The translations under genes and the position numbers were made by a program. Source: Mytilus edulis (lineage: Eukaryota). From it: a DNA stretch of 64,000 bases. Shown here piece after piece: positions 571 through 61,200 of the stretch. A model generated the notes under the pieces. It did no database searches, had not been told where the DNA came from, and saw only the letters and a program-made list of their open reading frames with translations. The first letter of the stretch is position 1. Each line of letters starts with the position of its first letter. The DNA is taken from assembly GCF_963676685.1 (NCBI RefSeq), contig NC_092356.1, forward strand, positions 64,666,001 to 64,730,000, written 5' to 3'.

Positions 571-1662
571 TAATACTGTAGCGTAACTAGCCTCTTTTAC
601 AAATAAAGCAAACTTTATATTGTTGGCGAGGGAAGGGCTCAAGGACTCCAGAAGAACTGGAAAAAATGATACAAAATCTTTCAGACCCTTTCTTAATCTA
701 AAGCGCAAGTTTTAATTTATCTATTTTATTATGTTCTGGTCTCGGAGCAAAATATATAGATACAGTGTAAGACTTTTAGTATTGACATGTATGAACAATA
801 TCAAAAGACATATGTAGGATGATGAAAAAAATAATGTAATCCACAAAGTCAAGTGTGTGGCTATTGTTAGTTTGGATTGGAAATTTTCTCACCGGAACGG
901 TGATCGAACCAGGAACTTATGTTTTTGTATAGTCCGATGCATTAACCTATGTTAATTTTGTATAATGAGGATCAATGGTCTAGTTCCTCGTTGAAGACCC
1001 TCCAGCTCCTTTCAAGATGAAGAACAGACATAAAAGCCCTGTTCATTAATAATTTGTATTTTTTCTATATATTGTGTGCGATTTTGTCCCGTGTACATTT
1101 ACTCCACATCTCTTTATTTTCTATTTCGGACCTGGACATGGCTCAATGCTAGTTTAGACCTCCAATGTTAAAGGTCATATGTTTTTTTTTAATTATTTGA
1201 TGCCGTGGGATTGGGATTTGTATTTACAGCCAAGATGGCCAGTTTTGTGTTCTGTAATATACTGTATCAGTTTAATTTTACTTGTCCGGTACTTCTCAAA
1301 ACATCTTCCGAACAATATCTGGACGTCGGTGTCGTGGGCATGTACAATTGCTAAACCACACATGAACGTTCTTTAGTCTTCGTAGATCTATTCCAACTTG
1401 AAGTCTTTTGAGTCTACGACAAGCAGAATATGATATTTTATACCATTAAATATTGAAGCCATAGTCATGAAGATCGATTACTTGATTGGTGTTCCGTTAA
1501 CGTAGCCGCAGAACAAAAACGCGAGAGCTATTTTTGAATATTTCTACAATTTTAAGTAGTTCTCCACTCACAAACACAATAATATTTTCAACATTTATTA
1601 AAATCTTTTTTTTTACACTTTTTAACTTTTATGTTGTTTTAAAATATCAATTTGACTTGAAT

Positions 1663-1992
1663 TTGGGATCCCGCTAACATGTTTAACCCCGCCACATTCA
1701 AAATGTATGTGCCTGTCCTAAGTCTGAAGCCTGTAATTCAGTGGTTGTCGTTTGTTTATGTGTTACATTTTTGTTTTTCGTTCAATTTTTGTGCATAAAT
1801 TAGGCCGTTTGTTTTCTTGTTTGAATTGTTTTACATTGTCATTTCGGAGCCTTTTATATATGACTATGCGGTATGGGCTTTGCTCATTGTTGAAGGCCGT
1901 ACGATGACCTATAGTTGATAATTTCTGTGTTATGTTGGTCTCTTGTGGAGAGTTGTCTCAATGACAATCATACCACATCTTCTTTTTTATAT
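1663..1992 (+). repeat. Dispersed repeat family A (GGGATCCCGCTAACATGTTTAACCCCGCC...CCACATCTTCTTTTT)
   Basis: Other copies at about 21636-21954 (-), 48352-48782 (-) and 59800-60033 (-). Partial or diverged copies near 2370-2830, 10510-10680, 31330-31570 and 34170-34290. Confidence 0.85.
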
Positions 1993-3718
1993 TTATATGA
2001 GTATATTAAATAAACATGTATATACCAAGCTAAGTCAGTTTATATCTTGTTTTTCGTCTGAATATACAAAAGGCGAGGAGAGCTACTTTGATAGATCAGG
2101 TTGACTGATAAGCTGTCTATATAAAGTAATGGGACAATGCATGGCATGAAGACATCACCAAATCACCGTATGCAATACTCAAAAAGACATCCAGAGCTTA
2201 CCATATAGTCATCAACTACCCACCAACAGGCCGTGAGTTTTGGTTGGCTCTTAACTCAAATCCAAGAGCACAGCAAAATGTCAAAATATTCTATTCAAAC
2301 TAGGTGACCTGGGAGAAAAACATTGAAATTTCCAAAGAAACACACACACCCTCAACTTTTAATAAGGAGATTTGGTATTAATGCAAATGAGTCAACTATC
2401 CATCAAAGTTCAAATGTAGTGGATGTAAGCAATTATATATAGGCAACCATATAACCTTCAACAATGAGAAAATGAAAACATACGGTATTGTCGGCTACAA
2501 TAGTCCATGAATTGAAAAATATGAAACAGTTCAATTGAGAAAAATAACAGCCTATTTTAAAACAACATGAATTACGAAAAACACATATAAAAGACATCAA
2601 CAAACGAAAACCGTTGAACTAAATGCTCCCGAGTTGGAGCAGGCACATGCAATATATTGTGGCGTTTAACATGCTTGTAAACAGCCGGGACAGTTTTGTT
2701 ACAGCACAGCATAAGAACAAACTATACAAATCAGTGGAAAAGGGCTTAACGTATGAGATAAATACAAAACAGAAGGAAAAAAAGGTCTAACAAAGACAAA
2801 TACCGAATGTGGCAGGGTATTTTTACCTCATTTTCAAACAACCAAAGTACTGAAGTACTGAACATCGAATGACTGCAAGTTCTTTTGGATTGTCACAAGC
2901 ACTTGTCTCAGAAAAAAAATCACATCTCTATTCTTGAAAGTGAAGTTAATGTACAGATATATTTTTTTGAAACTCAGTACACATATACTATATCATATGA
3001 TCTTTTTAATTTCAATGCCAAATATAGAGTTCTGACCCTCAATTCCACGGTCCACTAGACATGGAAAATGATAGTGCGAGTGGGGCATTTATGTGGTATG
3101 GACACATTCTTATTCAAATCCTTTATTAAAGAAGTCAGTAAATTTACTACAGATAACACTACATTTGTAAATTAGACGCACTAATCTAATTAAAAGGTAT
3201 ATCTCTGATTTCGTAATACTTATGTGTATGAGAAAATTAATATATATATTAATTTTGATAAGATTGTTGAACGAACGCGTTAAATCTTAGGATTTTATTC
3301 TTGTCAATTTTTCCGACCGAGCAGAGCGAGTCGAAAACAATTAAATAGACGTCTTTCAAGCCAAAGTTAATATGTTTGCTATACACACATATGATTTTAT
3401 TAAACTTGGTTATCAATTATTAATAAAAAATACAGTCCTAGATAATAAAAAATCATGAAATATTTGGTCTAGTTATAAAAAAAATCACACAAAAAAACAG
3501 TAGTTGTCGTTTGTTGATGTCGTTCTTGCTTCTCGTTTTTTAGCTCACCTGGCCCGAAGTGTCAAGTGTGCTTTTCTCATATCTTGGCGTCCGTCGTCCG
3601 TCGCCGTAACTTTTACAAAAATCTTCTCCACTGAAACTACTGAGCCAAATTCAACCAAACTTAGCCACCATCATCATTGGGGTATCTAGTATAACAAATC
3701 TGTCCGGAAGAGCATTGA

Positions 3719-4050
3719 GGACTCATCAGTGACGCTCATATCAAAATATTTATAAAGCCAAACAAGTACGAAGTTGAAGAGCATTGAGGATCCAAAATTC
3801 CAAAAAGTTGTGCCAAAAACGGCTAAGGTAATCTATTCCTGGGATAAGAAAATCCTTAGTTTTTCGAAAATTCAAAGTTTTCTATTCAGGAAATTTATAA
3901 AAATGACCACATAATTGATATTCATGTCAACACCGAAGTGCTGACTACTGGGCTGGTGATACCCTCGGGGTCGAAACGTCCACCAGCAGTGGCATCGACC
4001 CAGTGGTGTAAATAGTTATCAAAGCTACCAAGATTATAATTTAGTAAGAC
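3719..4050 (-). mobile_element. Retrozyme-like / PLE-associated repeat, truncated within its minimal type I hammerhead
   Basis: The minus strand reads GAGCGTCA-CTGATGA-GTC and then breaks. The body matches 34903-35198. Confidence 0.65.
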
Positions 4051-4286
4051 ACGCAAGAATAAAAAAAAATATTTGGCCTTCAATGTCTCAACCTTTTTTA
4101 ATGTGAGTAACTTCATTGTTCACTTAGATTTCGATTTTGATATTGTTTTTGCTAGTTTCCATAATAGATAATTCCGGTAATTGTTCTTCATAAAACCCTA
4201 TGGGAAAGCACATTAACTAAATTTTCCAAACGTTTATTGGAACCCAATGATTTGGCAAGGTGTTGCAACCTGTAATGTAAAAAAGT

Positions 4287-34185: not shown

Positions 34186-34943
34186 TTTCTCGTTTGAATT
34201 ATTAAACATTTGTATTCTCGGGGACTTTTATAGCTGACTATGCGATTTATGAGCTGTTCAGTGTTGAAGGTCATACAGTAAACTATATACACCTGTGTGC
34301 TCATTAACGATAACAGATTTTTAATTGTGTTTTTAAAAAGTTTCGATTCGCTGTCTCTGTTCGTTTGAATGTCCCACTAGTTCTTTTGCCTCTCTATCGC
34401 ATGTTTAGAGTAACATTCTACAGAACATTATACACTGTATTGTATTTAACATATCTGCATGTAATATGTTAGATGAAATAAACACAGATGAGATAATTTT
34501 TCTTGCTATCTCTACGTGGAAATGCCTGTTTTTTTCCAAAACTAGTCAAAGGACTATTTATTTTTCTAAAGAAAACTAGACAAATTATCTCCATTTAAAG
34601 TTTAAGAAACAAAAACTTTAACCCTTCCTATCTTCTTGTGATTATAATTGATATTGAGAAGAAAGATAGAGGCTATGGAAATTACCATCTGTCTGCTTAC
34701 GATTTCAGGTATGTATTCTTCAACTCTTCTCAATCAAGCTGATGTCTTAGCCGCATACTCTATGTGAGATTGTTAATATATTCGAAATGACTGGACAAAT
34801 AGTTTGGTTTCCTTAACCTTCAATATTTTATGACTATCATTTCTATTAATTTTTGTTTTGTGATAGTTCATTTATAATTGCTAGAACGCAGCCAATTTAG
34901 AAATAAACTCATCATTGATACCAGGATCGAAATTTTATATTTC

Positions 34944-34986
34944 CACCAGAGTCGAGTTTCGTCTACAAAAGACTCATCAGTGACGC
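34944..34986 (-). ncRNA. Minimal type I hammerhead ribozyme (stem III degenerate) within retrozyme-like repeat 34903-35198
   Basis: Minus strand: GCGUCA-CUGAUGA-GUC uuuugua GAC-GAAA-CUCGAC-UC-UGGUG. The core is intact but the 15.2-16.2 pair is lost. Confidence 0.65.
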
Positions 34987-36794
34987 TCGAATAAAAAAAA
35001 TGTTAAGAAAGCCAAATAAAGTACGAAGTTGAAGAACATTGAGGACCAAAAATTCCTAAAAGTTTTGTCGAATACAACTAAGTTAATCCCGAAGTAGAAA
35101 AGCCTAAGTATTTCAAAATTCAAAGTTTGTTAACAGGTAATTTATAATTATGAACATATCAATGATAACTCAAGTCAACACAGGAATGCTGACTACTATT
35201 CTGTTATTTATTGAAAGTATTTAAGACAAAGGTTTCTGTTTTTCACTTCCATTCTTTCATAAAAGCATTATAAATCATCACCATAATAACTAGTTATTTG
35301 TTATACGGTTAAATACTTCATCATCAGAAACAGATTTATTACTTATCAGTCTGTTGTCAAATAAGCGGTTATCATTTATCAGTCTGTTGTCAAATAAGCG
35401 GTTATCATTTATCTCTGTACGCTTTTTTTAAGGTCGTAATTTGTTAAACGATCTTTTTACAACGTTTAGATAAAGTAGCTTAAAACAACAGTTAATCGAT
35501 TTTTTAATTAAAATTAAAAAAAGCTAAAACCAAAGAAAAAATAATTGTCCTTCTTCATTTGAAATTTAGAAAGAAAGTGAGAGGTACTGTTAGCTACAAA
35601 AATGTTTTTAATCCATTTTCTCTACAGAAGAAAATGTCTGTACCAAGTTAAGATAAATAAACGTCCACCTGTCTTATTCTTTTCAAACAAACTGCTTTTT
35701 GGGGTTGTAACGGACTCGGTTAAATTACAGTCTCAACCAAGTACAATGCACAGATTTGGGAAGTTGAATTATCTCGGAGTACATAATTCAAAGTCTTTAT
35801 GATTGTAAGTCACCTCCCTTCTAAGACAATTCTGTTGTTCTCGTCACTATCTTGTTGACTTTTATTCAAATGATGCCTGCTTAACAAAAGAAGTCAAGAG
35901 ACTTCTTTTAATTGAAAATGATATTGAGAAAAAATAATAAAGCAACGAAAACTACTTTCTGTCTGCTAAAGATTTCAACTTTTTTTCAAAACAAGCTGCT
36001 GACAACGCTGTAAACTCTGTATTAGGAGATAAGAAATATATGGGGGGAAATAGTTTATGATTTCCTTATCCTTCCATATTTTATGACTCATTATAATCAT
36101 TTTCGTTTTGTGATGGTTGATTTATAGTTGCTAAACCGCAACTAATTTAGTATTTTTAAGGCAAAGGTTTCTGTTTGTTTATTTCCATTCGTTCATAAAT
36201 CATCACCATAATTACAAGGTATTTGTTAAACGTTTGATTACTTTATCATCGTTGACAGATTGATTGCTTTTGAGTCTGTTGTCAAACAAGCAGCGATCAT
36301 TTATCTCTGTTTTGTCTCGAACAAACATTTGTCCTACTACGTTTAGAAAAAGTTACAAAAAACAATACTCCCATTATTTCTAACTCTCAATTTCTTAGCG
36401 TTTACTTTACATTTGTTTGTGGTGTCCATTTCACCTAACTGAATATAAAAGTATGATTAACATTACACACAATTTTGCAGTGGAAAAACGTCATCTATAT
36501 CGCATATTTAAAGTAAAATAGATAATACTAGTTTGCATTTCCTATTGCAGCCTCTGTCATATGTTTGTACTATTTCGGGGAACATATTTGCCAGAAGTTC
36601 AGAATAGAGTATGTAGATCCTACACAAAAAACCAGAACCATATCAACAATAATATTAAATGGTTTCTATAAAGTTAGTTTCAAAATATTTCTCTAATGTT
36701 TACAGATTTTTCAGTTACTGTTGTGTACATTGTCTGTGTTCGGATTAATAGAGTAACATTATAAAAGGAACCTTTTTCAAATTTGACAAATCGT

Positions 36795-51470: not shown

Positions 51471-51570
51471 AAATGTATAAATTCGCATTCATGTCTGATC
51501 GTAATGTGAGGAAATTAACGTTTAAATATAGATTAAAAAAAAGGAATGGCATAAATTCCTGGATAAAATT
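51471..51570 (+). repeat. 100-bp target-site duplication, left copy
   Basis: Identical to 58191-58290. Single copy at the paralogous empty site, about 20600-20700. Confidence 0.95.
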
Positions 51571-51616
51571 TTTCAATAAATCGTTGTCAAAGCCTATCCC
51601 AGCACCCCAACTCCAT

Positions 51617-51769
51617 AGATCATAAGGTGTTTCGAACATCTATTTAGACCAATTAGAATTAACTAATTGATCATGGCCATGTCCATCGTCAGGAGCCCAA
51701 GCCATTGCATAGTGACACTTATTATAAAAATACTGTACCTTTTATTAGGGGCTCGACACCTCATGATCT
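51617..51769 (-). ncRNA. Type III hammerhead ribozyme (copy in left arm)
   Basis: Reverse complement of the same fold as 54507-54659. GUC cleavage predicted between 51755 and 51754. Confidence 0.88.
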
Positions 51770-51865
51770 GTCTGACTTATATTTTTCTATACTCTTTATC
51801 TACTTAACCTTGTTTATCAATTTAATGAACAAAGTATAGAATCTATTTTCATAGTCTGCAACATA

Positions 51866-53824
51866 TTAATTATTCAGAGTTGCTGATGTTACTATGTCTT
51901 TCAAGTTTTTATGCCTACGGAAAGCAAACAGAGGTCTTTTATCAAATAACAGTTTTGCCTCTTCGTCATCCTTTAATTTATCCCAGTGTTTTAAGATATT
52001 GTTCTTTATGTATGATTTCTGTCTTGAAAACACTGTGGAGAATACCAAGGGAGGCGACTGTAATACAGATTTGGGCTTTACCATTAATGTGTCTATTCTT
52101 TGTTTTGCAGTCACTTCCTGCATAACAGTTTTAATTTCATTTTTTGGATATCCCCTTTTAATGAGGCGCTCAGAAAATAACGCATATTGTGTTTGCAAAT
52201 CTACTGGATCGTTCGTACATCTCTTAAAGCGAAGCATTTCTCCTTTAATTATGCCTCTGAAAGTAGAGGATGGGTGGCATGAGGATCTCTCTAAATACTG
52301 ATAATTTTCAGTCTTTTTTCGGAATGTCGTGAGGTCTAAGATTCCTGTTTCTCTAAATCTTAGACCTTTGAATACCAGCACATCTAAAAACTGCATTTTA
52401 GTTTGTGATTTCTCGTGTGTAAACTTTAGAAGTGCATGTTGTCTATTAGCATGTTCAAAGAATTGTGATATTTCATCATCTGTACCTTCATTGTAAATAA
52501 AAAAGCCATCGTCCCTAAACCTGTAGAGACTTGATATTTTTTGTTTATGTTGAAAAGTCCTTAAAATACTATTTAAGACTTCATAAACTCTCAGATCCGT
52601 AATTTCTGGTGATAAACTATTTCCCATTGGAACTCCAGTTGAAGTTTTATAAAATTTACCATTGAACATAAATTCATTATTTTCAAGAACTATCTTCAGA
52701 AGTTCCACTATATATCGCAACGGAGGCAAAAGTATCGTATGTTTACATTTAATTATCGTAGGCCAAGCATGCTTGACTGCGTCAATCATTTCTACATGGG
52801 ACATATTGTTGTACATTTCTTTTATGTCAAAACTGACTAAGTAGGCGTCAGGTTTTACCTGCAATTTCTCAATAATATTTATAAATTCTAATGAGTCCCT
52901 TAAATGTGTTTCTTGTTTTAATACTGCTGGAAGCATGAATTTATCCAAATACTGCCCTATTCTCTCTAAAACAGTACCCGATAATGAAACAATAGGCCTT
53001 CCTTGAATTCTGACATTTTTATAAAGCGTAGGATTCTGTTGAACGCTTTCTATTAGTTCAGGATCAAGTTTGTGCAATTTAGGCAGAAGATACAACCTTC
53101 CTGGTTTGAGATCTCTCTTAGCAGAAAGATATTTAAAGGAGATTTCATCCATGACCCCTTTTCTATGCATTTCAAAGATAATAGTATTGATTTTTTGGTT
53201 AGTCTCTATTATGTTTAATTTTGCAATTTCCATGAAGTGAGTAGCACTACTTAATTGCCTCAGACCTTCATTTATATATTCTGTTTTATCCCAGATCACT
53301 GTGGTGTTATTTTTATCTGCTTTTCGAATAACTATTTTTTCGTTTCGTTTGAGGGAAGAAATTGCCTTTCTTTCCAGCGTAGTGAGATTATCGTGTGCTT
53401 TATTAATTGTTATATTATCTATCTCAACCTTAGTTTTGAATATATATGTCTCAATGGCATTATTTGCAAGTTCCGGTTTATATCCGGATTTTGTTAAAAA
53501 GGGATGACGTTTGAAAATATCACCCTTGTCAAAATGATATTTACATCTTAGTTTTCTTGCAAATTCATTGAAATCTGATGCAATACTAGATTTTGCAAAT
53601 TTCGTCGAGGGAGACGGTATATATTTTAATCCTTTACTGAGTAACAAAATCTCATCCTCTTTTATTTTTTCAGTGGTGAATATTTTAACATATTCACGTG
53701 CTTTTTCAATTGATTTTTTCCTCTTGAGAGAGCGAATCTTGATCTTTCTATTTTTCTGATAGAAGGCCTTTTTCATGATAGCCTTTTTTGTTTTTTTCGC
53801 TCTCTTAAAGTGTCTGTTAGCCAT
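51866..53824 (-). CDS. Penelope-like (Neptune-type) reverse transcriptase, no GIY-YIG; 652 aa from AGCATGG (open frame extends to 53917)
   Basis: Motifs LLSKGLKYIP, IRKADKN, LYLLPKLHK, GRPIVS, LVSFDIKEMY, GVPMG, YRFRDDGF, FLDV, SCHP, RGYP and AFRRHKNLKD followed by a stop. Confidence 0.92.
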   Translation of the reverse strand: MANRHFKRAKKTKKAIMKKAFYQKNRKIKIRSLKRKKSIEKAREYVKIFTTEKIKEDEILLLSKGLKYIPSPSTKFAKSSIASDFNEFARKLRCKYHFDKGDIFKRHPFLTKSGYKPELANNAIETYIFKTKVEIDNITINKAHDNLTTLERKAISSLKRNEKIVIRKADKNNTTVIWDKTEYINEGLRQLSSATHFMEIAKLNIIETNQKINTIIFEMHRKGVMDEISFKYLSAKRDLKPGRLYLLPKLHKLDPELIESVQQNPTLYKNVRIQGRPIVSLSGTVLERIGQYLDKFMLPAVLKQETHLRDSLEFINIIEKLQVKPDAYLVSFDIKEMYNNMSHVEMIDAVKHAWPTIIKCKHTILLPPLRYIVELLKIVLENNEFMFNGKFYKTSTGVPMGNSLSPEITDLRVYEVLNSILRTFQHKQKISSLYRFRDDGFFIYNEGTDDEISQFFEHANRQHALLKFTHEKSQTKMQFLDVLVFKGLRFRETGILDLTTFRKKTENYQYLERSSCHPSSTFRGIIKGEMLRFKRCTNDPVDLQTQYALFSERLIKRGYPKNEIKTVMQEVTAKQRIDTLMVKPKSVLQSPPLVFSTVFSRQKSYIKNNILKHWDKLKDDEEAKLLFDKRPLFAFRRHKNLKDIVTSATLNN

Positions 53825-54274
53825 GCTTACAGATCGGAGGAATTCGCCAGAAGGCAGTGTGCAATTCATTTCTTGATGTAATATTGATTCTTTATCAAGC
53901 CTGTATGAACTCACCAACCAATCAGATATCAGTTACTCATTAGGAAACTAAATAAGGGGAAGAGGAGAACATCCCTCTAGACATTGCAACCAATCACCAT
54001 TCATTGCTCTATAAACTGACACGTATACTAGATGTATTTTGACAATTTGACTTTTTAATTTATCAGACACTCAAAAACCATGCATTTTTGTTTTGCAAAT
54101 CTCAGCACTTTATTATCAACTTATTCCACTCACTAAACTCTGACGTATTGGTTTTTACATTTACTTTCCCTGTATTATATAGGTATTATAACTTTAATAT
54201 TTCAATAAATAATAAATCAACCTTTTTAGCTTTCGGTAAAGATATTTTTCACATTTAATATCTATTTTGACAGA

Positions 54275-54705
54275 AATATCTTAAATCAATGGGATACATT
54301 GAAGGATGACGAAGAGGCAAACATTTTATTTTATTTGATAAAAGACCTCTGTTTGCTTTCCGTATGCATAAAAACTTGAAAGACACAGTAACATCAGCAA
54401 CTCTGGGTAATTGATATGTTGCAGATTATGAAAATAGTTTCTAAACTTTGTTCGTTAAATTGATAAACAAAGTTAAGTAGATAAAGAGGATAGAAAAATA
54501 TAAAACAGATCATGAGGTGTCGAGCCCCTAATAAAAATTACAGTATTTTTATAATAAGTGTCACTATGCAATGGCTTGGGCTCCTGACGATGGACATGGC
54601 CATGGTCAATTAGTTAATTCTGATTGGTCTAAATAGATGTTCGAAACACCTTATGATCTATGGAGTTGGGGTGCTGGGATAGGCTTTGACAACGATTTAT
54701 TGAAA
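54275..54705 (+). repeat. 5-prime pseudo-LTR: diverged direct copy of the element 3-prime end (57760-58189)
   Basis: Contains a decayed RT C-terminus (DDEEA...FDKRPLFAF), the 3-prime UTR and the hammerhead. Confidence 0.92.
54507..54659 (+). ncRNA. Type III hammerhead ribozyme (5-prime pLTR copy)
   Basis: Stem III AGAUCAUGAGGUGU/ACACCUUAUGAUCU (14 bp), C17 at 54521, stem I GAGCCC/GGGCUC, core CUGACGA, extra U, stem II GGACAU/AUGUUC, then GAAA. Confidence 0.9.
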
Positions 54706-55015
54706 GAAATCCTTGCTTGAGGAGACAGAGCGAATGATAGGTCGTGGAAGTGCAGAAGAAGGCGCTTGTCTAAAAAGGTTGACATTCCTAGTAAAAGAAA
54801 AGAAAGAGATATGGAACGAACGATATCTGAGGGCTATTCGAAACATGTCGACATCTAGTACCGAGAAACCGGAAACTGAAGCAAATACTATATCTAAACT
54901 CCAGGATGAGTTACGAGAGCTGAGAGGCTTCCTTGAACCATCCCATCGAGGACGAGGCGGACGTCGATTTAATCGTGGAAGGGGGAGGGGAGGAAGAAGA
55001 TTTCCCTCCGTTTAA
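54637..55015 (+). CDS. ORF1: small helical protein with C-terminal RGG/RG tail; probably 124 aa from ATG 54637, frameshifted here by GAAAGAAA at 54702-54709
   Basis: GC-richer, open 100-codon frame 54713-55015 (ISKLQDELRELRGFL...RGRGGRRFNRGRGRGGRRF). The upstream frame MFETPYDLWSWGAGIGFDNDLLK joins it if one GAAA is removed. Confidence 0.6.
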
Positions 55016-55762
55016 GAATTAAACAGTATCGAACAATATTGAAATGACTTTGTACATAACTCATAACTTTTACTTTTATCGGAAAATAAATGATTTAACT
55101 TAACTGTGTAACTTCAGACAAGTCGTTGGAAGATGATAAAACATTTAACGCGTGCCTATACACTTAGTTAGTGATGTTTTTTGACAAACAGCTGTAAAGT
55201 GTGTGAATAAAAGTGTAATATCTTATCAGTTCTTGAGTTACGCTTAATTTATAGATAATTGATATAGCAGAACACAGGAGGTTAGTTTATCAATGAACCC
55301 AATGCAATTATGATAATAAACAAATGTTTACAAATATATCTTTATTTAAAGTTGAGAAATAAAGCTATCAAAGATAATTTTTGGTAATTCGTTCACGTTA
55401 AGTGGTCAGAATTAATACATTATAATTAAATGCAACGGTTATAATCGGCTAAAGCAATAGTTCATTGCCAATATGTTTCTTATTTCTGTCAAAATAGATA
55501 TTAAATGTGAAAAATATCTTTACCGAAAGCTAAAAAGGTTGATTTATTATTTATTGAAATATTAAAGTTATAATACCTATAGAATACAGGGAAAGTAAAT
55601 GTAAAAACCAATACGTCAGAGTTTAGTGAGTGGAATAAGTTGATAATAAAGTGCTGAGATTTGCAAAACAAAAATGCATGGTTTTTGAGTGTCTGATAAA
55701 TTAAAAAGTCAAATTGTCAAAATACATCTGGTATACGTGTCAGTTTATAGAGCAATGAATGG

Positions 55763-55844
55763 TGATTGGTTGCAATGTCTAGAGGGATGTTCTCCTCTTC
55801 CCCTTATTTAGTTTCCTAATGAGTAACTGATATCTGATTGGTTG
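55763..55844 (+). promoter_or_regulatory. Candidate internal promoter for RT: two TGATTGGTTG (inverted CCAAT) boxes 72 bp apart
   Basis: The 10-mer occurs at 55763 and 55835, 90-170 bp upstream of ATG 55935, and is mirrored in the left arm. Confidence 0.35.
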
Positions 55845-55983
55845 GTGAGTTCATACAGGCTTGATAAAGAATCAATATTACATCAAGAAATGAATTGCAC
55901 ACTGCCTTCTGGCGAATTCCTCCGATCTGTAAGCATGGCTAACAGACACTTTAAGAGAGCGAAAAAAACAAAAAAAGGCTATC

Positions 55984-57894
55984 ATGAAAAAGGCCTTCTA
56001 TCAGAAAAATAGAAAGATAAAGATTCGCTCTCTCAAGAGGAAAAAATCAATTGAAAAAGCACGTGAATATGTTAAAATATTCACCACTGAAAAAATAAAA
56101 GAGGATGAGATTTTGTTACTCAGTAAAGGATTAAAATATATACCGTCTCCCTCGACGAAATTTGCAAAATCTAGTATTGCATCAGATTTCAATGAATTTG
56201 CAAGAAAACTAAGATGTAAATATCATTTTGACAAGGGTGATATTTTCAAACGTCATCCCTTTTTAACAAAATCCGGATATAAACCGGAACTTGCAAATAA
56301 TGCCATTGAGACATATATATTCAAAACTAAGGTTGAGATAGATAATATAACAATTAATAAAGCACACGATAATCTCACTACGCTGGAAAGAAAGGCAATT
56401 TCTTCCCTCAAACGAAACGAAAAAATAGTTATTCGAAAAGCAGATAAAAATAACACCACAGTGATCTGGGATAAAACAGAATATATAAATGAAGGTCTGA
56501 GGCAATTAAGTAGTGCTACTCACTTCATGGAAATTGCAAATTTAAACATAATAGAGACTAACCAAAAAATCAATACTATTATCTTTGAAATGCATAGAAA
56601 AGGGGTCATGGATGAAATCACCTTTAAATATCTTTCTGCTAAGAGAGATCTCAAACCAGGAAGGTTGTATCTTCTGCCTAAATTGCACAAACTTGATCCT
56701 GAACTAATAGAAAGCGTTCAACAGAATCCTACGCTTTATAAAAATGTCAGAATTCAAGGAAGGCCTATTGTTTCATTATCGGGTACTGTTTTAGAGAGAA
56801 TAGGGCAGTATTTGGATAAATTCATGCTTCCAGCAGTATTAAAACAAGAAACACATTTAAGGGACTCATTAGAATTTATGAATATTATTGAGAAATTGCA
56901 GGTAAAACCTGACGCCTACTTAGTCAGTTTTGACATAAAAGAAATGTACAACAATATGTCCCATGTAGAAATGATTGACGCAGTCAAGCATGCTTGGCCT
57001 ACGATAATTAAATGTAAACATACGATACTTTTGCCTCCGTTGCGATATATATTGGAACTTCTGAAGATAGTTCTTGAAAATAATGAATTTATGTTCAATG
57101 GTAAATTTTATAAAACTTCAACTGGAGTTCCAATGGGAAATAGTTTATCACCTGAAATTACGGATCTGAGAGTTTATGAAGTCTTAAATAGTATTTTAAG
57201 GACTTTTCAACATAAACAAAAAATATCAAGTCTCTACAGGTTTAGGGACGATGGCTTTTTTATTTACAATGAAGGTACAGATGTTGAAATATCACAATTC
57301 TTTGAACATGCTAATAGACAACATGCACTTCTAAAATTTACACACGAGAAATCACAAACTAAAATGCAGTTTTTAGATGTGCTGGTATTCAAAGTTCTAA
57401 GATTTAGAGAAACAGGAATCTTAGACCTCACGACATTCCGAAAAAAGACTGAAAATTATCAGTATTTAGAGAGATCCTCATGCCACCCATCCTCTACTTT
57501 CAGAGGCATAATTAAAGGAGAAATGCTTCGCTTTAAGAGATGTACGAACGATCCAGTAGATTTGCAAACACAATATGCGTTATTTTCTGAGCGCCTCATT
57601 AAAAGGGGATATCCAAAAAATGAAATTAAAACTGTTATGCAGGAAGTGACTGCAAAACAAAGAATAGACACATTAATGGTAAAGCCCAAATCTGTATTAC
57701 AGTCGCCTCCCTTGGTATTCTCCACAGTGTTTTCAAGACAGAAATCACACATAAAGAACAATATCTTAAAACACTGGGATAAACTAAAGGATGATGAAGA
57801 GGCAAAACTGTTATTTGATAAAAGACCTCTGTTTGCTTTCCGTAGGCATAAAAACTTGAAAGACATAGTAACATCAGCAACTCTGAATAATTAA
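55984..57894 (+). CDS. Penelope-like reverse transcriptase, second copy (636 aa); an extra A at 55970-55976 disconnects the upstream ATG at 55935
   Basis: Same motifs, 7 amino-acid differences from the minus copy. A7 here vs A6 in the other arm (could be a homopolymer error). Confidence 0.9.
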   Translation: MKKAFYQKNRKIKIRSLKRKKSIEKAREYVKIFTTEKIKEDEILLLSKGLKYIPSPSTKFAKSSIASDFNEFARKLRCKYHFDKGDIFKRHPFLTKSGYKPELANNAIETYIFKTKVEIDNITINKAHDNLTTLERKAISSLKRNEKIVIRKADKNNTTVIWDKTEYINEGLRQLSSATHFMEIANLNIIETNQKINTIIFEMHRKGVMDEITFKYLSAKRDLKPGRLYLLPKLHKLDPELIESVQQNPTLYKNVRIQGRPIVSLSGTVLERIGQYLDKFMLPAVLKQETHLRDSLEFMNIIEKLQVKPDAYLVSFDIKEMYNNMSHVEMIDAVKHAWPTIIKCKHTILLPPLRYILELLKIVLENNEFMFNGKFYKTSTGVPMGNSLSPEITDLRVYEVLNSILRTFQHKQKISSLYRFRDDGFFIYNEGTDVEISQFFEHANRQHALLKFTHEKSQTKMQFLDVLVFKVLRFRETGILDLTTFRKKTENYQYLERSSCHPSSTFRGIIKGEMLRFKRCTNDPVDLQTQYALFSERLIKRGYPKNEIKTVMQEVTAKQRIDTLMVKPKSVLQSPPLVFSTVFSRQKSHIKNNILKHWDKLKDDEEAKLLFDKRPLFAFRRHKNLKDIVTSATLNN

Positions 57895-57990
57895 TATTTT
57901 GCAGACTATGAAAATAGATTCTATACTTTGTTCATTAAATTGATAAACAAGGTTAAGTAGATAAAGAGTATAGAAAAATATAAGTCAGAC

Positions 57991-58143
57991 AGATCATGAG
58001 GTGTCGAGCCCCTAATAAAAAGTACAGTATTTTTATAATAAGTGTCACTATGCAATGGCTTAGGCTCCTGACGATGGACATGGCCGTGATCAATTAGTTA
58101 ATTCTAATTGGTCTAAATAGATGTTCGAAACACCTTATGATCT
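57991..58143 (+). ncRNA. Type III hammerhead ribozyme (3-prime pLTR copy)
   Basis: GUC 58003-58005, CUGACGA 58068-58074, GAAA 58127-58130. Stem I is 5 bp in this copy. Confidence 0.9.
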
Positions 58144-58190
58144 ATGGAGTTGGGGTGCTGGGATAGGCTTTGACAACGATTTATTGAAAT

Positions 58191-58290
58191 AAATGTATAA
58201 ATTCGCATTCATGTCTGATCGTAATGTGAGGAAATTAACGTTTAAATATAGATTAAAAAAAAGGAATGGCATAAATTCCTGGATAAAATT
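58191..58290 (+). repeat. 100-bp target-site duplication, right copy
   Basis: AAATGTATAAATTCGC...GGATAAAATT is identical to 51471-51570. Confidence 0.95.
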
Positions 58291-61200
58291 GAGAATGGAA
58301 ATGGGGAAATAGTCAGAGAGAAAATAACCGAACTAAAGAGCAGACAACAGCCGAAGGCCACCAATGGGTCTTAAATGCAGCGAGCAAAATCCAGTACCAA
58401 AGGGTGGACCCTATATATTATATATATTTTGTACTAGTTCAGTAAAAATGAACGTTTGCCTGTGTTTTTTTCTTATATCTAAAGTTATTATTCCATTTCG
58501 GTCTAAATAATCGATATGCAACTTTTTTGTATTCGTGTCAATAGGGTAAATAAATAAACCCCTTGGAGTCTTTTTTAACACTAATATCATATTATTTTGC
58601 AAGCATCATATATGTTCATATTTAAGATCTATCATTTTCTAGTGCAATATAACATGTCTTTTCTAAACTATATATCACAATCATTGTTAAATATTCAAAC
58701 CATCAATGTTGCTGTTGTACATTCTAAGTTGACATATTATCTCCTAATCTTATAAAGCCCACATAACTTTATCACTTATCATCATATATTGCATAACATC
58801 AAAACAACATTTAAGTAAACAATTATGTCACCACCTACAAACCTTGTTGACATCATGACACTTACATTGATTGTTTGTTTTGAATGCTGGTTAGGATATT
58901 GACTTCATCTGAGAAGGTCTAAGCTGTTGATTTGTCTTATCATCTAGTGACAGACATTGCTTACGTACAATAATGTTTCATTTTCTATTAGGAAAACTGA
59001 TCTTCCTTGTTTTTGAACAAACAGTAACACTTTCAATTAATAGATGATTTACTCATTGCAACCGTTTCACAATCTCATTTGTATTTTCTAACTCACGAAC
59101 ATATATCTTAGCTGTATTTGACACAACCTTTCGTACTATTGGTCCTGAATGCTATTCAACCTCGTACTTTATTTGTCTTTTCTAACTTTTTTGATTCGAA
59201 TAACACTTATTCTATGAGTCTTTCGTAGAAGCGCACAAGGTTAACACAATTTTAATCCTTGTATCTATGATGAGTTTATATTAATACAAAATATTTATTC
59301 TACTAAACTATATCACTTTAGAAACAAATTAAATAGATAGGAATAAATAAATAGATATTAAAAGAAGAATTCAAAATAATGCATATTGTTCATCAATGCC
59401 GACGTTATAAATTTATATGCACATATACAGTGTTGAAGTTGAATTTCCATTTCTAATGAAACAAATGCAGAAAATGTTTCGGTTATGAAATATCTTCAAA
59501 AACGTCAATACGCATCGTTTAAACTGTAGTAGAGTCTTATGGGATTTATATTGAGCAATACTCAAAGGATATCAAACAAAAAGAAATATTCCTTATAACT
59601 AAATAACTCACCATGCTATTTATGGTCTTTTTTCCTTTTCATTTAACATAACTCGAAAAATTTAACTTGTTTGTTAGCTTAAACTAGCAATGTACACTGC
59701 TATCATCGAAATCAAAATATTTTCTTGTACCGAATGCCACCAGTTATTAGGCTAGGCGCACAACTATCTTTTCGATGCTGATATCGAGCACAACCATATT
59801 TAAAAAAAAATACCAGGTTGAACCAATACATTTTTATAATAATATGAAATCATTGCAGAAGCCCATACCGCATAGTCAGCTATAAAAGGCCCCGAAATGA
59901 CAATGTAAAACAATTCAAACGAGAAAACTAACGGCCTTATTCATATAAAAAAAATGAACGAAAAACAAATATGTAACACATAACCAAACGACAACCACTA
60001 AATCACAGGCTCCTGACTTGGGATAGGCTCATACCACACAAACAGTCAACTCAACGCAGAGTCATAGATATGACTTCTGACATGTTGTCTTTAACTTAGC
60101 TCTGCTAAAAATCCGCATAGACGATTTGAATTAAAATATGAATGTCTGGTAAAGTGTTCATTTAAATATGTAAATATTCTTACATTGTTTGAACTGTTTC
60201 GAATATGGAACCACCTGCTTATGGTGTGGTTCCTGTTGTGTATACTTTAAAAGTTGTTACCTGTTGAGGAGAGTTTGTGTTGCTTTGACTTTAGTTGTTA
60301 CATGTTTAAGTTTGTTTGTGTTGATTAGACTGAATTTGTTACATGTTTATGTTTGTTCGATTATTCGAGTTGCTAAAACTTAAGTTGTTACATATTTGTG
60401 TTTGTCATTTTGATGGTTTTCCTTTTTTGCCAAGTAGATGTCAGTTTCTAATTCCATTTGCTCTATTCAGCTTTTCTTCTATCATTTGAAAGTATATGTC
60501 CTAGTTTCTTTCTCAATAATATAACAACCAAAAGTTATTGATTTATCAGAAACAAAATATCTGCTAAACAAATATAAGATCGCATTATTGTACTTGAAAT
60601 GAAATCACGCGGATGACTGACATGATAAAAGTGTTTATTTTTCTTTTTTCATTTTTTACTGATTAACGTTTCTACTAGATGAAATCGTATGACTGAACAT
60701 GTAAAAGATTTAAAATAAGATCAAACAGAATCCGACTTAATGCTTCCTTTTAAATCTTTATGATACCATTATGTTTTACAAACATGCAGAAAATTTTTCT
60801 CTTTGTTTTTAAACTGTCCTCTAGATCAAAGTAAACTCACGTAATCAATACCCACGATCTTGATTAATTGACTAAATTGATGATTTATTCAAGTTCTTGT
60901 TAATTAATTCCCTTAAGTTGATACAAATATATTTTGCATGATTTTGTAATAAAAATGGAATCTGTTGTCCGTTGACATTCCATACATGGTCTTGATAGGA
61001 AAAACAGGAAGGTTGGTCGGACGGACAACAATTTAAACCTCAACCTCCAATTGAATTTCCGGAACCACGTCAAATTACCTAGACCATGGATTGTTCAATG
61101 TTGTTTGCCTCTGTTAGTATGTCTAAATTTTTAGATGGAGTTGGATATTGGTGGTTTGTTATTTATACTGTAAATTCATTTTTTGTAATTTCAATCATTC

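What the first reader, a model, noticed from the sequence alone, without database searches (positions are those of the whole stretch)
51571..58190. Candidate new retroelement system: endonuclease-free PLE RT + RGG ORF1 bracketed by type III hammerheads (possible 3.5-kb circular RNA)
Seen: same-strand ribozyme cleavage sites after 54521 and 58005 delimit a 3484-nt unit containing a small RGG-tailed ORF and an RT ORF with no nuclease. After cleavage, the 14-bp stem III would pair the 3-prime end of this unit with its 5-prime region, holding the two ends together. Established: PLE pLTRs usually carry minimal type I hammerheads, while type III motifs typify viroids, satellite RNAs and plant retrozymes that form circles. 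The EN-less PLEs I know (Athena, Coprina) are telomere-associated, and I see no telomeric repeats here. Inference: an interstitial, recently mobile RT-encoding element with a self-processed, possibly circular RNA packaged by its own RNA-binding protein. I cannot confirm novelty without database searches.
Basis: partly seen in the sequence, partly recalled or inferred. Interest (0 to 1): 0.92.

Follow-up and report, generated by a model that had tools for sequence, protein, structure and literature searches.

The report
Endonuclease-less mussel Penelope retrotransposon with hammerheads

Summary
The sequence features are real, but the proposed unit is not. Window 51571-58190 is one insertion flanked by a perfect 100-bp duplication. 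It consists of two 5'-truncated copies lying head-to-head.

- **Hammerheads.** Three type III-topology hammerheads sit at the stated sites. Chance expectation is 0, and Rfam misses them.
- **No endonuclease.** The RT stops exactly where endonuclease-bearing (EN+) relatives begin their Cys linker and GIY-YIG domain.
- **True unit size.** The full element, seen in tandem arrays elsewhere in this Mytilus genome, is 4262 nt with a 266-aa ORF1. The window's 100-aa "ORF1" is its truncated C-terminus.
- **Chimeric origin.** The upstream hammerhead (54275-54705) comes from a different, ~2.07-kb non-autonomous derivative RNA (99.5% identity, against 92.5% to the autonomous unit). The 3484-nt "unit" is therefore a template-switch chimera.
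- **Cleavage in vivo.** Template-switch junctions at three or more loci, and in a second family, begin exactly at the predicted cut. Insertions end 184-189 nt downstream of the cut.
- **Wider clade.** The RT belongs to a well-supported clade of ~640-aa endonuclease-less (EN-) PLEs. It holds at least 40 clusters at 50% identity, found in mussels and oysters, nested among EN+ PLEs. Other members carry type I hammerheads.
- **RNA.** Three raw-read RNA runs gave 62, 5 and 3 reads, and nothing indicates circles.

Endonuclease loss inside EN+ PLE clades is already published. I class this as a new variant of a known kind.

The parts
51471..51570 (.). Left copy of the 100-bp target-site duplication
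   Evidence: Identical at 100/100 positions to 58191-58290, and both copies abut the element ends.
51571..54278 (-). Left arm: a 5'-truncated copy (unit positions 1739-4262 followed by 1-189) with its 3' end facing outward
   Evidence: Reverse complement of 55481-58189 at 99-100%. Mapped onto the 4262-nt unit.
51617..51769 (-). Hammerhead ribozyme of type III topology; cut between 51755 and 51754
   Evidence: Scanner hit with stems of 6/6/14 bp.
51866..53917 (-). RT ORF of the left arm (683 aa from TTG; first ATG at 53869), intact, with no endonuclease
   Evidence: The same open frame of 688 aa is present in at least 11 other genomic copies.
54275..54705 (+). 3' end (RT tail plus pLTR) copied from the ~2.07-kb non-autonomous derivative RNA, joined to the left arm through a 4-nt overlap
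   Evidence: 99.5% identical to the non-autonomous arrays on C12, against 92.4-92.6% to the autonomous unit. The overlap of arms is at 54275-54278.
54507..54659 (+). Upstream hammerhead (type III topology); cut after 54521
54706..54711 (+). 6-nt filler at the template-switch junction between the pLTR 3' end and the truncated ORF1
   Evidence: Read directly from the sequence. Unit position 978 corresponds to 54712.
54712..58190 (+). Right arm: a 5'-truncated autonomous copy (unit positions 978-4262 followed by 1-186)
54713..55015 (+). C-terminal 100 codons of ORF1, carrying the RGG/RG-rich tail; the N-terminal 166 codons are missing
   Evidence: The full 266-aa ORF1 is present in C7, C9 and C2 copies. 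Homologues were found only in Mytilus.
55984..57894 (+). RT ORF (636 aa from an internal ATG). The upstream 31 codons are out of frame because of a 1-nt length difference in an A-run
57991..58143 (+). Downstream hammerhead (type III topology); cut after 58005
   Evidence: stems of 5/6/14 bp.
58191..58290 (.). Right copy of the 100-bp target-site duplication

Best explanation
Window 51571-58190 is one recent integration event of an active, endonuclease-less Penelope-like element family of Mytilus. The family's full unit is 4262 nt and reads: 5' UTR, 266-aa helical ORF1 with an RGG tail, an ~820-nt spacer, a ~667-aa RT, then a pLTR carrying a hammerhead.

How the insertion formed (inferred from its anatomy):
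- Both DNA 3'-OH ends of a break staggered by 100 bp primed reverse transcription. This gave two 5'-truncated copies lying head-to-head with their 3' ends outward, plus a 100-bp target duplication.
- On the right side the RT reached a premature 5' end inside ORF1. It then jumped to the 3' end of a second RNA, the ~2.07-kb non-autonomous derivative of the same family, and copied 431 nt.
- The two cDNAs joined through 4 nt of microhomology.
- This jump created the upstream 'pLTR'. The 3484-nt spacing between the two hammerheads is therefore accidental.

The hammerhead: it is a genuine, monomeric self-cleaving ribozyme. It is homologous to the type I hammerheads of sister families (shared GAAACAC...GUGUC|G, and a bulged U before a 5-6-bp helix II) but circularly permuted to type III.

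Its likely role (inferred): it cuts read-through or tandem transcripts to give template RNAs a defined 5' end. The RT starts cDNA synthesis at a site 184-189 nt downstream of the cut, so a template must carry an uncut 3' hammerhead. The cut-off 3' fragments (unit 1-189) are themselves reverse-transcribed and appear as mini-units at junctions.

Integration without its own nuclease most likely uses pre-existing DNA ends or nicks. Help from the many co-resident EN+ PLEs cannot be excluded.
For: Anatomy of the insertion:
- Inverted arms and direct repeats.
- Mapping onto the 4262-nt unit taken from the C7 array.
- The 266-aa ORF1 in full copies.
- Chimeric origin of 54275-54705.

Head-to-head arrangement and target duplications:
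- 3' ends face outward at all 8 family-A loci where both sides are visible, and in family B.
- The window has a 100-bp TSD, the C6 locus has ~19-23 bp, and C5 and C7 have none.

Hammerhead:
- Motifs at three sites, against 0 expected by chance.
- Among 21 sequence variants the helices are invariant. Most substitutions fall in loops, and two single copies carry changes at conserved core positions.
- Sister families keep a hammerhead directly after the RT stop codon, but with different helix sequences. Helix I: GAGCCC/GGGCUC vs GGACCC/GGGUCC vs GGCCC/GGGCC. Helix II: GGACAU/AUGUUC vs GGUAG/CUACC vs GGAUU/AAUCC.

Cleavage in vivo:
- In family A, four junctions at three loci read '...gaaatatt+N|gagcccc', so the new piece starts at the first nucleotide after GUC.
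- In family B, two junctions read '...|gggtcc'.

No endonuclease:
-.
- Only ~300 nt (family A) or ~230 nt (family B) lie between the RT stop codon and the element end.

Clade:
- FastTree gives 100% SH-like support for about 40 proteins of ~640 aa, including the window RT. The clade sits among EN+ proteins with CX5CxxC linkers.
- 77 proteins end within 25 aa of the KNL motif, 40 of them 50%-identity cluster representatives.

Recent activity: at least 13 uninterrupted full-length RT matches at 99-100% identity.
Against: - No biochemical test of cleavage was possible.
- There is no compensatory covariation inside the young family.
- Rfam's hammerhead models do not match.
- What creates the RNA 3' end at unit position 184-189 is unknown. 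I found no poly(A) signal and no known ribozyme there. If the RT enters internally at that site, circular or unit-length templates would fit the same DNA data.
- Many 5' ends fall at unit positions 75-137. These could be transcription starts rather than RT stops, which would reduce the role of the ribozyme in 5'-end formation.
- The 100-bp 'TSD' was not checked against an empty allele.
- RNA depth was too low to see RNA ends.
- The tree was made with FastTree and midpoint rooting, without named reference PLEs.
Confidence: 0.7

Rival explanations
1. Tandem or partial-tandem copies are transcribed and the hammerheads cut out unit-length RNA: 4262 nt for the autonomous element, ~2.07 kb for the non-autonomous one, and 3484 nt from this particular locus. 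The 14-bp helix III holds the two ends together for ligation by a host RNA ligase. The RT then enters the circle internally at unit position ~189 and copies it by rolling circle, producing pLTRs and tandem arrays. This would be an autonomous 'retrozyme'.
For: - The topology is type III, with a long, stable, open helix III, as in viroids and plant retrozymes.
- There are seamless tandem arrays whose units match one reference unit at 99.8-100% identity: 6 units on one arm and at least 3 on the other on C7, and 2-3 units in the non-autonomous arrays.
- Insertion 3' ends lie at a fixed internal position relative to the cut. This is what internal RT entry on a unit-length or circular RNA would give. 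Linear monomers would then yield exactly the observed 1-189 mini-units.
- Mussels do accumulate small hammerhead circRNAs from retrozymes (PMC7229834).
Against: - No RNA evidence supports it. Only 62, 5 and 3 reads were found in three raw RNA runs, and much of the pLTR signal is read-through from a flank elsewhere.
- A junction-spanning read cannot distinguish a circle from a tandem copy.
- End-to-end junctions with a variable extra nucleotide after '...gaaatatt' look like jumps onto a free RNA 3' end.
- Sister families have type I hammerheads with closed helix III and build the same arrays, so type III topology is not needed for array formation.
- The window's own 3484-nt product would lack an intact ORF1.
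Confidence: 0.15
2. The family is not self-sufficient for integration. It relies on the GIY-YIG nuclease of co-resident EN+ PLEs acting in trans, so the head-to-head structure and the TSD are made by that nuclease.
For: - The same genome holds many intact EN+ PLE ORFs (869-980 aa open frames covering RT plus GIY-YIG). Several are also in head-to-head pairs.
- Inverted 5'-truncated partners and variable TSDs are described for EN+ PLEs (PMC8557442).
Against: - The EN- architecture has been kept across at least 40 divergent clusters and several bivalve genera, with intact ORFs. This suggests a stable, self-sustaining strategy.
- TSDs of 0, ~20 and 100 bp are more irregular than expected from a dedicated nuclease.
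- To my knowledge, no trans-complementation of PLE endonuclease has been reported.
Confidence: 0.15
3. The hammerhead is a selfish passenger or relic with no role in the element's cycle. The junctions at the cut site reflect incidental cleavage.
For: - Craig et al. (PMC8557442) note that Naiads thrive without hammerheads and suggest hammerheads may simply parasitize PLEs.
- Two family-A copies with core-inactivating changes exist.
Against: - A hammerhead with an intact core is kept directly after the RT stop codon in at least four families whose RTs are only 36-43% identical, with helix sequences changed in a compensatory way.
- It is also retained in the non-autonomous derivative, which has lost most of the coding sequence.
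Confidence: 0.1

Closest known systems
EN- offshoots inside EN+ PLE clades (Neptune-like MjPLE01 of kuruma shrimp; Chlamys PLE-X), as summarised in PMC8557442
   Same: - A PLE RT that has lost the C-terminal GIY-YIG domain.
- Not telomeric.
- Nested among EN+ relatives; here the nearest EN+ proteins carry a CX5CxxC linker, as Neptune and Nematis do.
   Different: - Here the loss founded a large, diversified clade: at least 40 clusters at 50% identity, in mussels, oysters and pearl oysters.
- The clade has very recent activity.
- This family also has a separate ORF1 and a full-size type III hammerhead.
- I could not place MjPLE01 itself in my tree.
Athena / Coprina (telomere-associated EN- PLEs)
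   Same: - No endonuclease.
- An upstream ORF1 with long helices (coiled-coil-like).
- Hammerheads with a large helix III that can act as monomers, as in fungal and protist Coprina (PMC4209133).
   Different: - Insertions are interstitial.
- The 3' end has no run of reverse-complement telomeric repeats.
- TSDs reach 100 bp.
- The RT groups with C-terminal EN+ animal PLEs in my tree.
Canonical EN+ PLEs (Penelope/Poseidon, Neptune, Nematis)
   Same: - RT domain layout.
- pLTRs formed by partial tandems.
- An inverted 5'-truncated partner and variable TSDs.
- A hammerhead in the pLTR with a 6-bp helix II and a bulged 5' base.
   Different: - No GIY-YIG domain.
- The hammerhead is full-size with all three helices (14-bp helix III) and type III topology, rather than the minimal type I form that works as a dimer.
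[quoted passage not shown]
   Same: - Hammerhead-delimited repeat units, in tandem arrays.
- A non-autonomous ~2.07-kb derivative that keeps the ribozyme and is co-mobilised with the autonomous element. The window insertion contains pieces of both.
   Different: - The main element is protein-coding and 4.26 kb long.
- No circRNA has been shown.
- Insertion ends do not coincide with the ribozyme cuts.
HDV-like and twister ribozymes at the 5' ends of non-LTR retrotransposons (R2, L1Tc, RTE)
   Same: The proposed role is the same: self-cleavage frees the element RNA 5' end from upstream transcript.
   Different: - A different ribozyme class and a different element class.
- Here the same ribozyme also sits near the template's 3' end and must stay uncut there.

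Membership tests
Penelope-like elements (PLE) | PLE-type RT (N-terminal DKG-containing region, RT motifs, C-terminal HTH/thumb ending in the RxKNL motif) | tested here: met
   - 28% identity over 560 aligned positions (query residues 88-636) to an RT+GIY-YIG protein.
- Relatives carry PF28514, PF26215 and PF00078.
- The ADKN and FRDD motifs were read in the translation.
Penelope-like elements (PLE) | Pseudo-LTRs from partial tandems, often with an inverted 5'-truncated copy | tested here: met
   compared with the Fig. 2 legend of PMC8557442.
Penelope-like elements (PLE) | Hammerhead motif in the pLTR with a long helix II and a bulged 5' base | tested here: met
   the hallmark is described in PMC4209133.
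Canonical EN+ PLE | C-terminal Cys linker plus GIY-YIG endonuclease | tested here: not met
   - No PF01541 hit.
- The ORF ends before the linker.
- Only ~300 nt separate the stop codon from the element end.
Athena/Coprina-type telomeric EN- PLE | Telomeric location and reverse-complement telomeric repeats at the 3' end | tested here: not met
   - No TTAGGG/CCCTAA dimers in the window.
- A single CCCTAA hexamer lies in helix I, and about one per 4.3 kb is expected by chance.
- Copies lie at interstitial coordinates on many chromosomes.
Athena/Coprina-type telomeric EN- PLE | RT groups phylogenetically with Athena or Coprina | not testable with these tools
   No named reference sequences were available. 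In my tree the clade sits next to C-terminal EN+ proteins.
Neptune-derived EN- PLE (MjPLE01-like) | RT nested in the Neptune clade (EN+ members with a CX2-5CxxC linker) | tested here: inconclusive
   EN+ relatives such as P0068 and P0070, in a neighbouring branch, have CX5CxxC linkers. No named Neptune reference was included, and only FastTree was used.
Hammerhead ribozyme, type III | Core CUGANGA...GAAA, NUH cleavage triplet, three helices with helix III open | tested here: met
   There is one extra U between A9 and G10.1, shared with sister families.
Hammerhead ribozyme, type III | Match to the curated Rfam covariance models | tested here: not met
   No hammerhead hit at the gathering threshold or at E<=10. 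The likely cause is the 50-nt loop 1 and the 39-nt insert in helix II.
Hammerhead ribozyme, type III | Self-cleavage at the predicted site | tested here: inconclusive
   The support is indirect. Genomic junctions start exactly at the predicted first nucleotide in two families. No biochemical test was done.
Retrozyme (hammerhead circRNA retroelement) | Non-coding unit delimited by hammerheads and accumulating as circular RNA | tested here: inconclusive
   - A ~2.07-kb hammerhead-delimited non-autonomous derivative exists in arrays.
- RNA reads were too few to judge any form.
- The autonomous element is protein-coding.

The most novel reading that the evidence does not exclude
The 4.26-kb coding element and its 2.07-kb derivative are cut out by their full-size hammerheads, ligated into circles through the 14-bp helix III, and copied by rolling-circle reverse transcription from an internal entry site at unit position ~189. 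That would make this the first autonomous, protein-coding 'retrozyme' in animals and would explain how PLE pseudo-LTRs and tandem arrays arise.
Probability: 0.15. Interest if true: 0.85.

Novelty: new variant of a known kind. Interest (0 to 1): 0.55.

Why it matters
The role of hammerheads in Penelope-like elements is openly described as a mystery (PMC7761336). How endonuclease-less retroelements colonise chromosome interiors is also poorly understood.

This Mytilus family offers a young, multi-copy, apparently active system with several useful properties:
- The ribozyme is full-size and should work as a monomer.
- Its cleavage leaves readable footprints in genomic template-switch junctions.
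- Sister families carry the same ribozyme in the permuted type I form.
- A non-autonomous partner is co-mobilised.
- The endonuclease has been absent across a large bivalve clade.

Together these make the questions "what does the PLE hammerhead do?" and "how does an EN- PLE integrate?" testable with ordinary assays.

Tried and rejected
- **Rfam.** I scanned the window at gathering threshold, then the window region and the full-length unit at E<=10. No ribozyme family matched, including at the 189|190 boundary where I looked for a second ribozyme.
- **A second hammerhead at the 3' end.** I considered a minimal dimeric hammerhead at '...GAAAUAUU|' as the source of the RNA 3' end. I rejected it because no CUGANGA lies upstream.
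- **Discrete 5' end at unit position 190.** I considered this and withdrew it. The pieces run continuously across 189|190.
- **Covariation within family A.** Uninformative because the copies are too young.
- **ORF1.** No Pfam hit. Homologues occur only in Mytilus. The AlphaFold model has pLDDT 47, too poor for a fold search, so none was run.
- **ESM Atlas.** It gave only generic PLE RT clusters.
- **RNA reads.** Too few to map ends or judge circles. The library strandedness is unknown, so sense and antisense cannot be told apart.
- **IQ-TREE.** The run did not finish in time, so FastTree was used instead.
- **More distant PLE contigs from metagenomes.** My descriptor found no full-size hammerhead in them. 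It does not detect minimal helix-III-less forms.
- **Tool limits.** I therefore could not read the other M. edulis EN- families, or the diverged family-A relatives on C14, C8 and C11.
- **Assembly artefact.** Rejected. The same architecture recurs at at least 8 loci, and the element is held by runs from 11 studies.

Full report
**What is in the window**

The region 51571-58190 is bounded by a perfect 100-bp direct repeat, 51471-51570 and 58191-58290. Inside, 51571-54278 is the reverse complement of 55481-58189 at 99-100% identity. Each arm holds a reverse-transcriptase ORF: 51866-53917 on the minus strand and 55984-57894 on the plus strand.

Between the arms lie a short plus-strand copy of the RT 3' end plus terminal repeat (54275-54705), six filler bases, and a 100-codon ORF ending in an RG/RGG-rich tail (54713-55015).

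The best protein matches are 99% identical to Mytilus edulis database entries. The window is at 64.67-64.73 Mb of a 75-Mb contig in a 1.37-Gb assembly.

**The hammerheads are real motifs**

Reading the sequence and applying a descriptor I wrote both give three identical-architecture motifs. Their cuts are after 54521 and 58005 on the plus strand, and at 51755|51754 on the minus strand.

Each motif reads as follows:
- a 14-bp helix III whose 5' strand ends in GUC|
- a 5-6-bp helix I closed by a 50-nt loop
- CUGACGA plus one extra U
- a 6-bp helix II (GGACAU/AUGUUC) extended by a 10-bp distal stem
- GAAA
- the 3' strand of helix III

This is type III topology. Twenty simulated windows gave no hit. 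The 161-nt stretch folds with a z-score of -5.0, and helices I and III appear in the minimum-energy structure.

Rfam finds no hammerhead at all, even at E<=10. The large inserts in loop 1 and helix II probably explain this.

Among 21 distinct genomic variants the three core helices never vary. Most substitutions fall in loops. One copy changes only the free core position N7, and two single copies carry core-inactivating changes. There is no compensatory change, so within-family covariation says nothing either way.

**The '3484-nt unit' and the 'small ORF1' are junction artefacts**

Elsewhere in the genome the family forms tandem arrays with a 4262-nt period, for example six units on one strand and at least three on the other on contig C7. 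I numbered the unit from the first base after the cut.

| Unit position | Feature |
|---|---|
| 1-189 | terminal segment; insertions end at 184-189 |
| ~190-480 | 5' UTR |
| 481-1281 | ORF1, 266 aa |
| 1282-2099 | spacer |
| 2100-4151 | RT open frame (first ATG gives ~667 aa) |
| 4262 | cut site |

The window's right-hand copy begins at unit position 978, in the middle of ORF1.

The upstream terminal-repeat piece (54275-54705) is 99.5% identical to a ~2.07-kb internally deleted, non-autonomous derivative (unit 1-497 + 1349-2544 + 3891-4262). That derivative forms its own arrays on C12, C5 and C13. The same piece is only 92.4-92.6% identical to the autonomous unit.

So the two plus-strand hammerheads derive from two different template RNAs, joined at 54705/54712. 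The left arm is a third piece, truncated at unit 1739 and joined through a 4-nt overlap at 54275-54278.

Neither copy in the window is a complete element:
- The left arm has an intact RT frame but no ORF1.
- The right arm has a truncated ORF1. A one-base length difference in an A-run also puts the first 31 RT codons out of frame.

**No endonuclease, and this is a clade property**

Pfam reports only RVT_1, marginally below its cut-off. The ORF ends at ...FRRHKNLKDIVTSATLNN. This aligns with residues 698-717 of an 872-aa relative, which continues into a CX5CxxC linker and a GIY-YIG domain at 770-838.

Only ~300 nt separate the stop codon from the element's end, and the hammerhead occupies that space.

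Nearly all of about 40 database proteins of ~640 aa, at 35-48% identity, end within a few residues of the same KN(L/I) motif. They come from Mytilus edulis, M. trossulus, M. galloprovincialis, Saccostrea and Pinctada, plus many unnamed assemblies.

In a FastTree phylogeny these proteins form one clade with 100% SH-like support that includes the window RT. The clade lies next to EN+ proteins.

Across both protein searches, 77 proteins that cover the RT to its C-terminal motif stop within 25 residues of it, and 40 of these represent 50%-identity clusters. Another 34 continue for at least 90 residues, and 25 of those carry a GIY...YIG pattern.

The same genome also holds many intact EN+ PLEs.

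**Sister families carry the same ribozyme in type I form**

Family B is a second family, found in the M. edulis proteome and this genome. Its RT is 40% identical, its period is 2566 nt, and it has no ORF1. Directly after its stop codon it reads:
- GGACCC
- CUGAUGA plus U
- GGUAG...CUACC (helix II)
- GAAA
- an 8-9-bp helix III hairpin
- GUC|GGGUCC

Two further families on environmental contigs (36-40% RT identity) show the same layout with other helix sequences (GGCCC/GGGCC and GGAUU/AAUCC). A third, seen by eye, has a 4-bp helix III, and its helix II does not pair canonically.

All of them share GAAACAC...GUGU(C/U)|G. All but the third share the bulged U. A 6-bp helix II with a bulged 5' base is the published hallmark of PLE hammerheads (PMC4209133).

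The window's type III motif is therefore best read as a circular permutation of the clade's type I ribozyme. This is an inference; a tandem duplicate of the motif would generate it. The changes of helix sequence across families, with the core conserved, are the covariation that the young family itself lacks.

**Footprints of cleavage**

Family-A insertions end at '...ttattgaaa' plus 0-5 bases of 'tattt'.

At three loci (four junctions) a new piece follows '...gaaatatt+N' and starts exactly at GAGCCCC, the first base after GUC. One of these pieces continues as a complete non-autonomous unit, and the others are 184-189-nt mini-units.

Family B shows two junctions of the same kind, '...|GGGTCC'.

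With roughly 20-25 junctions spread over a 4.3-kb unit, three independent hits on one predicted nucleotide are far beyond chance. My estimate is below 1e-4, even if junctions are confined to the 200-nt repeat. This is indirect but specific evidence that both ribozyme forms cut in vivo, and that cut RNAs serve as templates.

**Integration**

At all eight family-A loci where both sides can be seen, and in family B, copies lie head-to-head with their 3' ends outward.

Target duplications are 100 bp here and ~19-23 bp on C6. None was detectable on C5 or C7.

The geometry fits priming of reverse transcription from both 3'-OH ends of staggered breaks. The same arrangement is described for EN+ PLEs (PMC8557442) and seen for them in this genome. 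It is therefore not diagnostic of nuclease-free integration. Pre-existing breaks or nicks are my preferred source of primers, and an endonuclease supplied in trans remains possible.

**RNA**

No indexed run that holds the sequence is on record as RNA. I laid three raw-read RNA runs of the same species label on a full unit. They gave 62, 5 and 3 reads from 1.2-1.8 Gb sampled per run.

Most reads were 95-99% identical, so they come from other copies. Part of the terminal-repeat signal continues into foreign flanks, which indicates read-through. No pile-up of ends was detected. This neither supports nor excludes circles, but it shows no abundant RNA species in those samples.

**ORF1**

ORF1 has no Pfam family. 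Homologues occur only in Mytilus, at 66-92% identity over aligned columns. A low-confidence model (pLDDT 47) shows long helices at 127-240 and a disordered RG-rich tail. RNA binding or packaging is a reasonable guess, not a result. Family B lacks ORF1 altogether, so ORF1 is not a clade feature.

**Comparison with what is known**

[quoted passage not shown] An interstitial EN- PLE therefore has precedent.

PLE hammerheads are described as minimal type I variants. Metazoan hammerheads are described as mostly type I, and the role of PLE hammerheads is called a mystery (PMC7229834, PMC7761336).

In the papers I could search, I did not find any of the following:
- a large bivalve EN- clade
- a full-size type III hammerhead in a PLE
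- junction footprints of PLE hammerhead cleavage

This is absence in a limited library. I had no access to Repbase or Dfam.

**Verdict**

It is wrong about the unit and ORF1, and unproven about circles. I class it as a new variant of a known kind, of moderate interest.

Earlier notes of this scan on the same window agree on the extra core U, the 100-bp double-primed TSD and the RT stopping before the linker.

Noticed in passing
G000 C12:50.10 Mb (L052), C5:74.11 Mb (L048), C13:19.39 Mb (L050): A ~2.07-kb internally deleted, non-autonomous derivative of the family (unit 1-497 + 1349-2544 + 3891-4262) forms its own tandem arrays. It is 91-95% identical to the autonomous unit. It keeps the hammerhead, the 5' UTR and the whole ORF1-RT spacer, which suggests the spacer has a cis-acting role.
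   Followed up: partly
L053-L064 (G000 C8:63.78 Mb, C8:78.28 Mb, C12:50.11 Mb): A second EN- PLE family (RT 40% identical, 2566-nt period, no ORF1). It has a type I hammerhead directly after the RT stop codon. Its insertions end 55-58 nt past the cut, and its units are ~98-100% identical.
   Followed up: partly
window ~34900-35000, minus strand: A small type I hammerhead-like motif (gagcgtca-CTGATGA-gtcttttgtagac-GAAA...). It resembles the motifs seen near L063 and L064, and the type I retrozyme hammerheads reported for Mytilus. Here its helix III looks degenerate.
   Followed up: no
window 54526-54531 and 58010-58015: A single CCCTAA hexamer, the reverse complement of the TTAGGG telomere unit, lies directly after the hammerhead cut, within helix I. 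About one such hexamer per 4.3 kb is expected by chance, so it is probably a coincidence.
   Followed up: partly
family-A loci, unit positions 75-137 of the upstream pLTR: About nine copies have their 5' ends clustered inside the 3' half of the hammerhead. These could mark a transcription-start cluster or RT stalling at the folded ribozyme.
   Followed up: no
G000, e.g. C3:19659724-19666151, C13:14671169-14677626, C11:43828358-43834079: Many intact EN+ PLEs (RT plus GIY-YIG, open frames of 869-980 aa), several in head-to-head pairs like the EN- family.
   Followed up: no
window 60252-60333: Two tandem 41-nt units, 76% identical, about 2 kb downstream of the insertion. They appear unrelated to it.
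   Followed up: no
family-A and family-B 3' termini: Both element 3' ends share TTTATTnnAA (A: ...gatttattgaaatattt; B: ...gttttattataacaaaa), with no poly(A) tail and no AATAAA. This may be an RT entry or priming motif.
   Followed up: no
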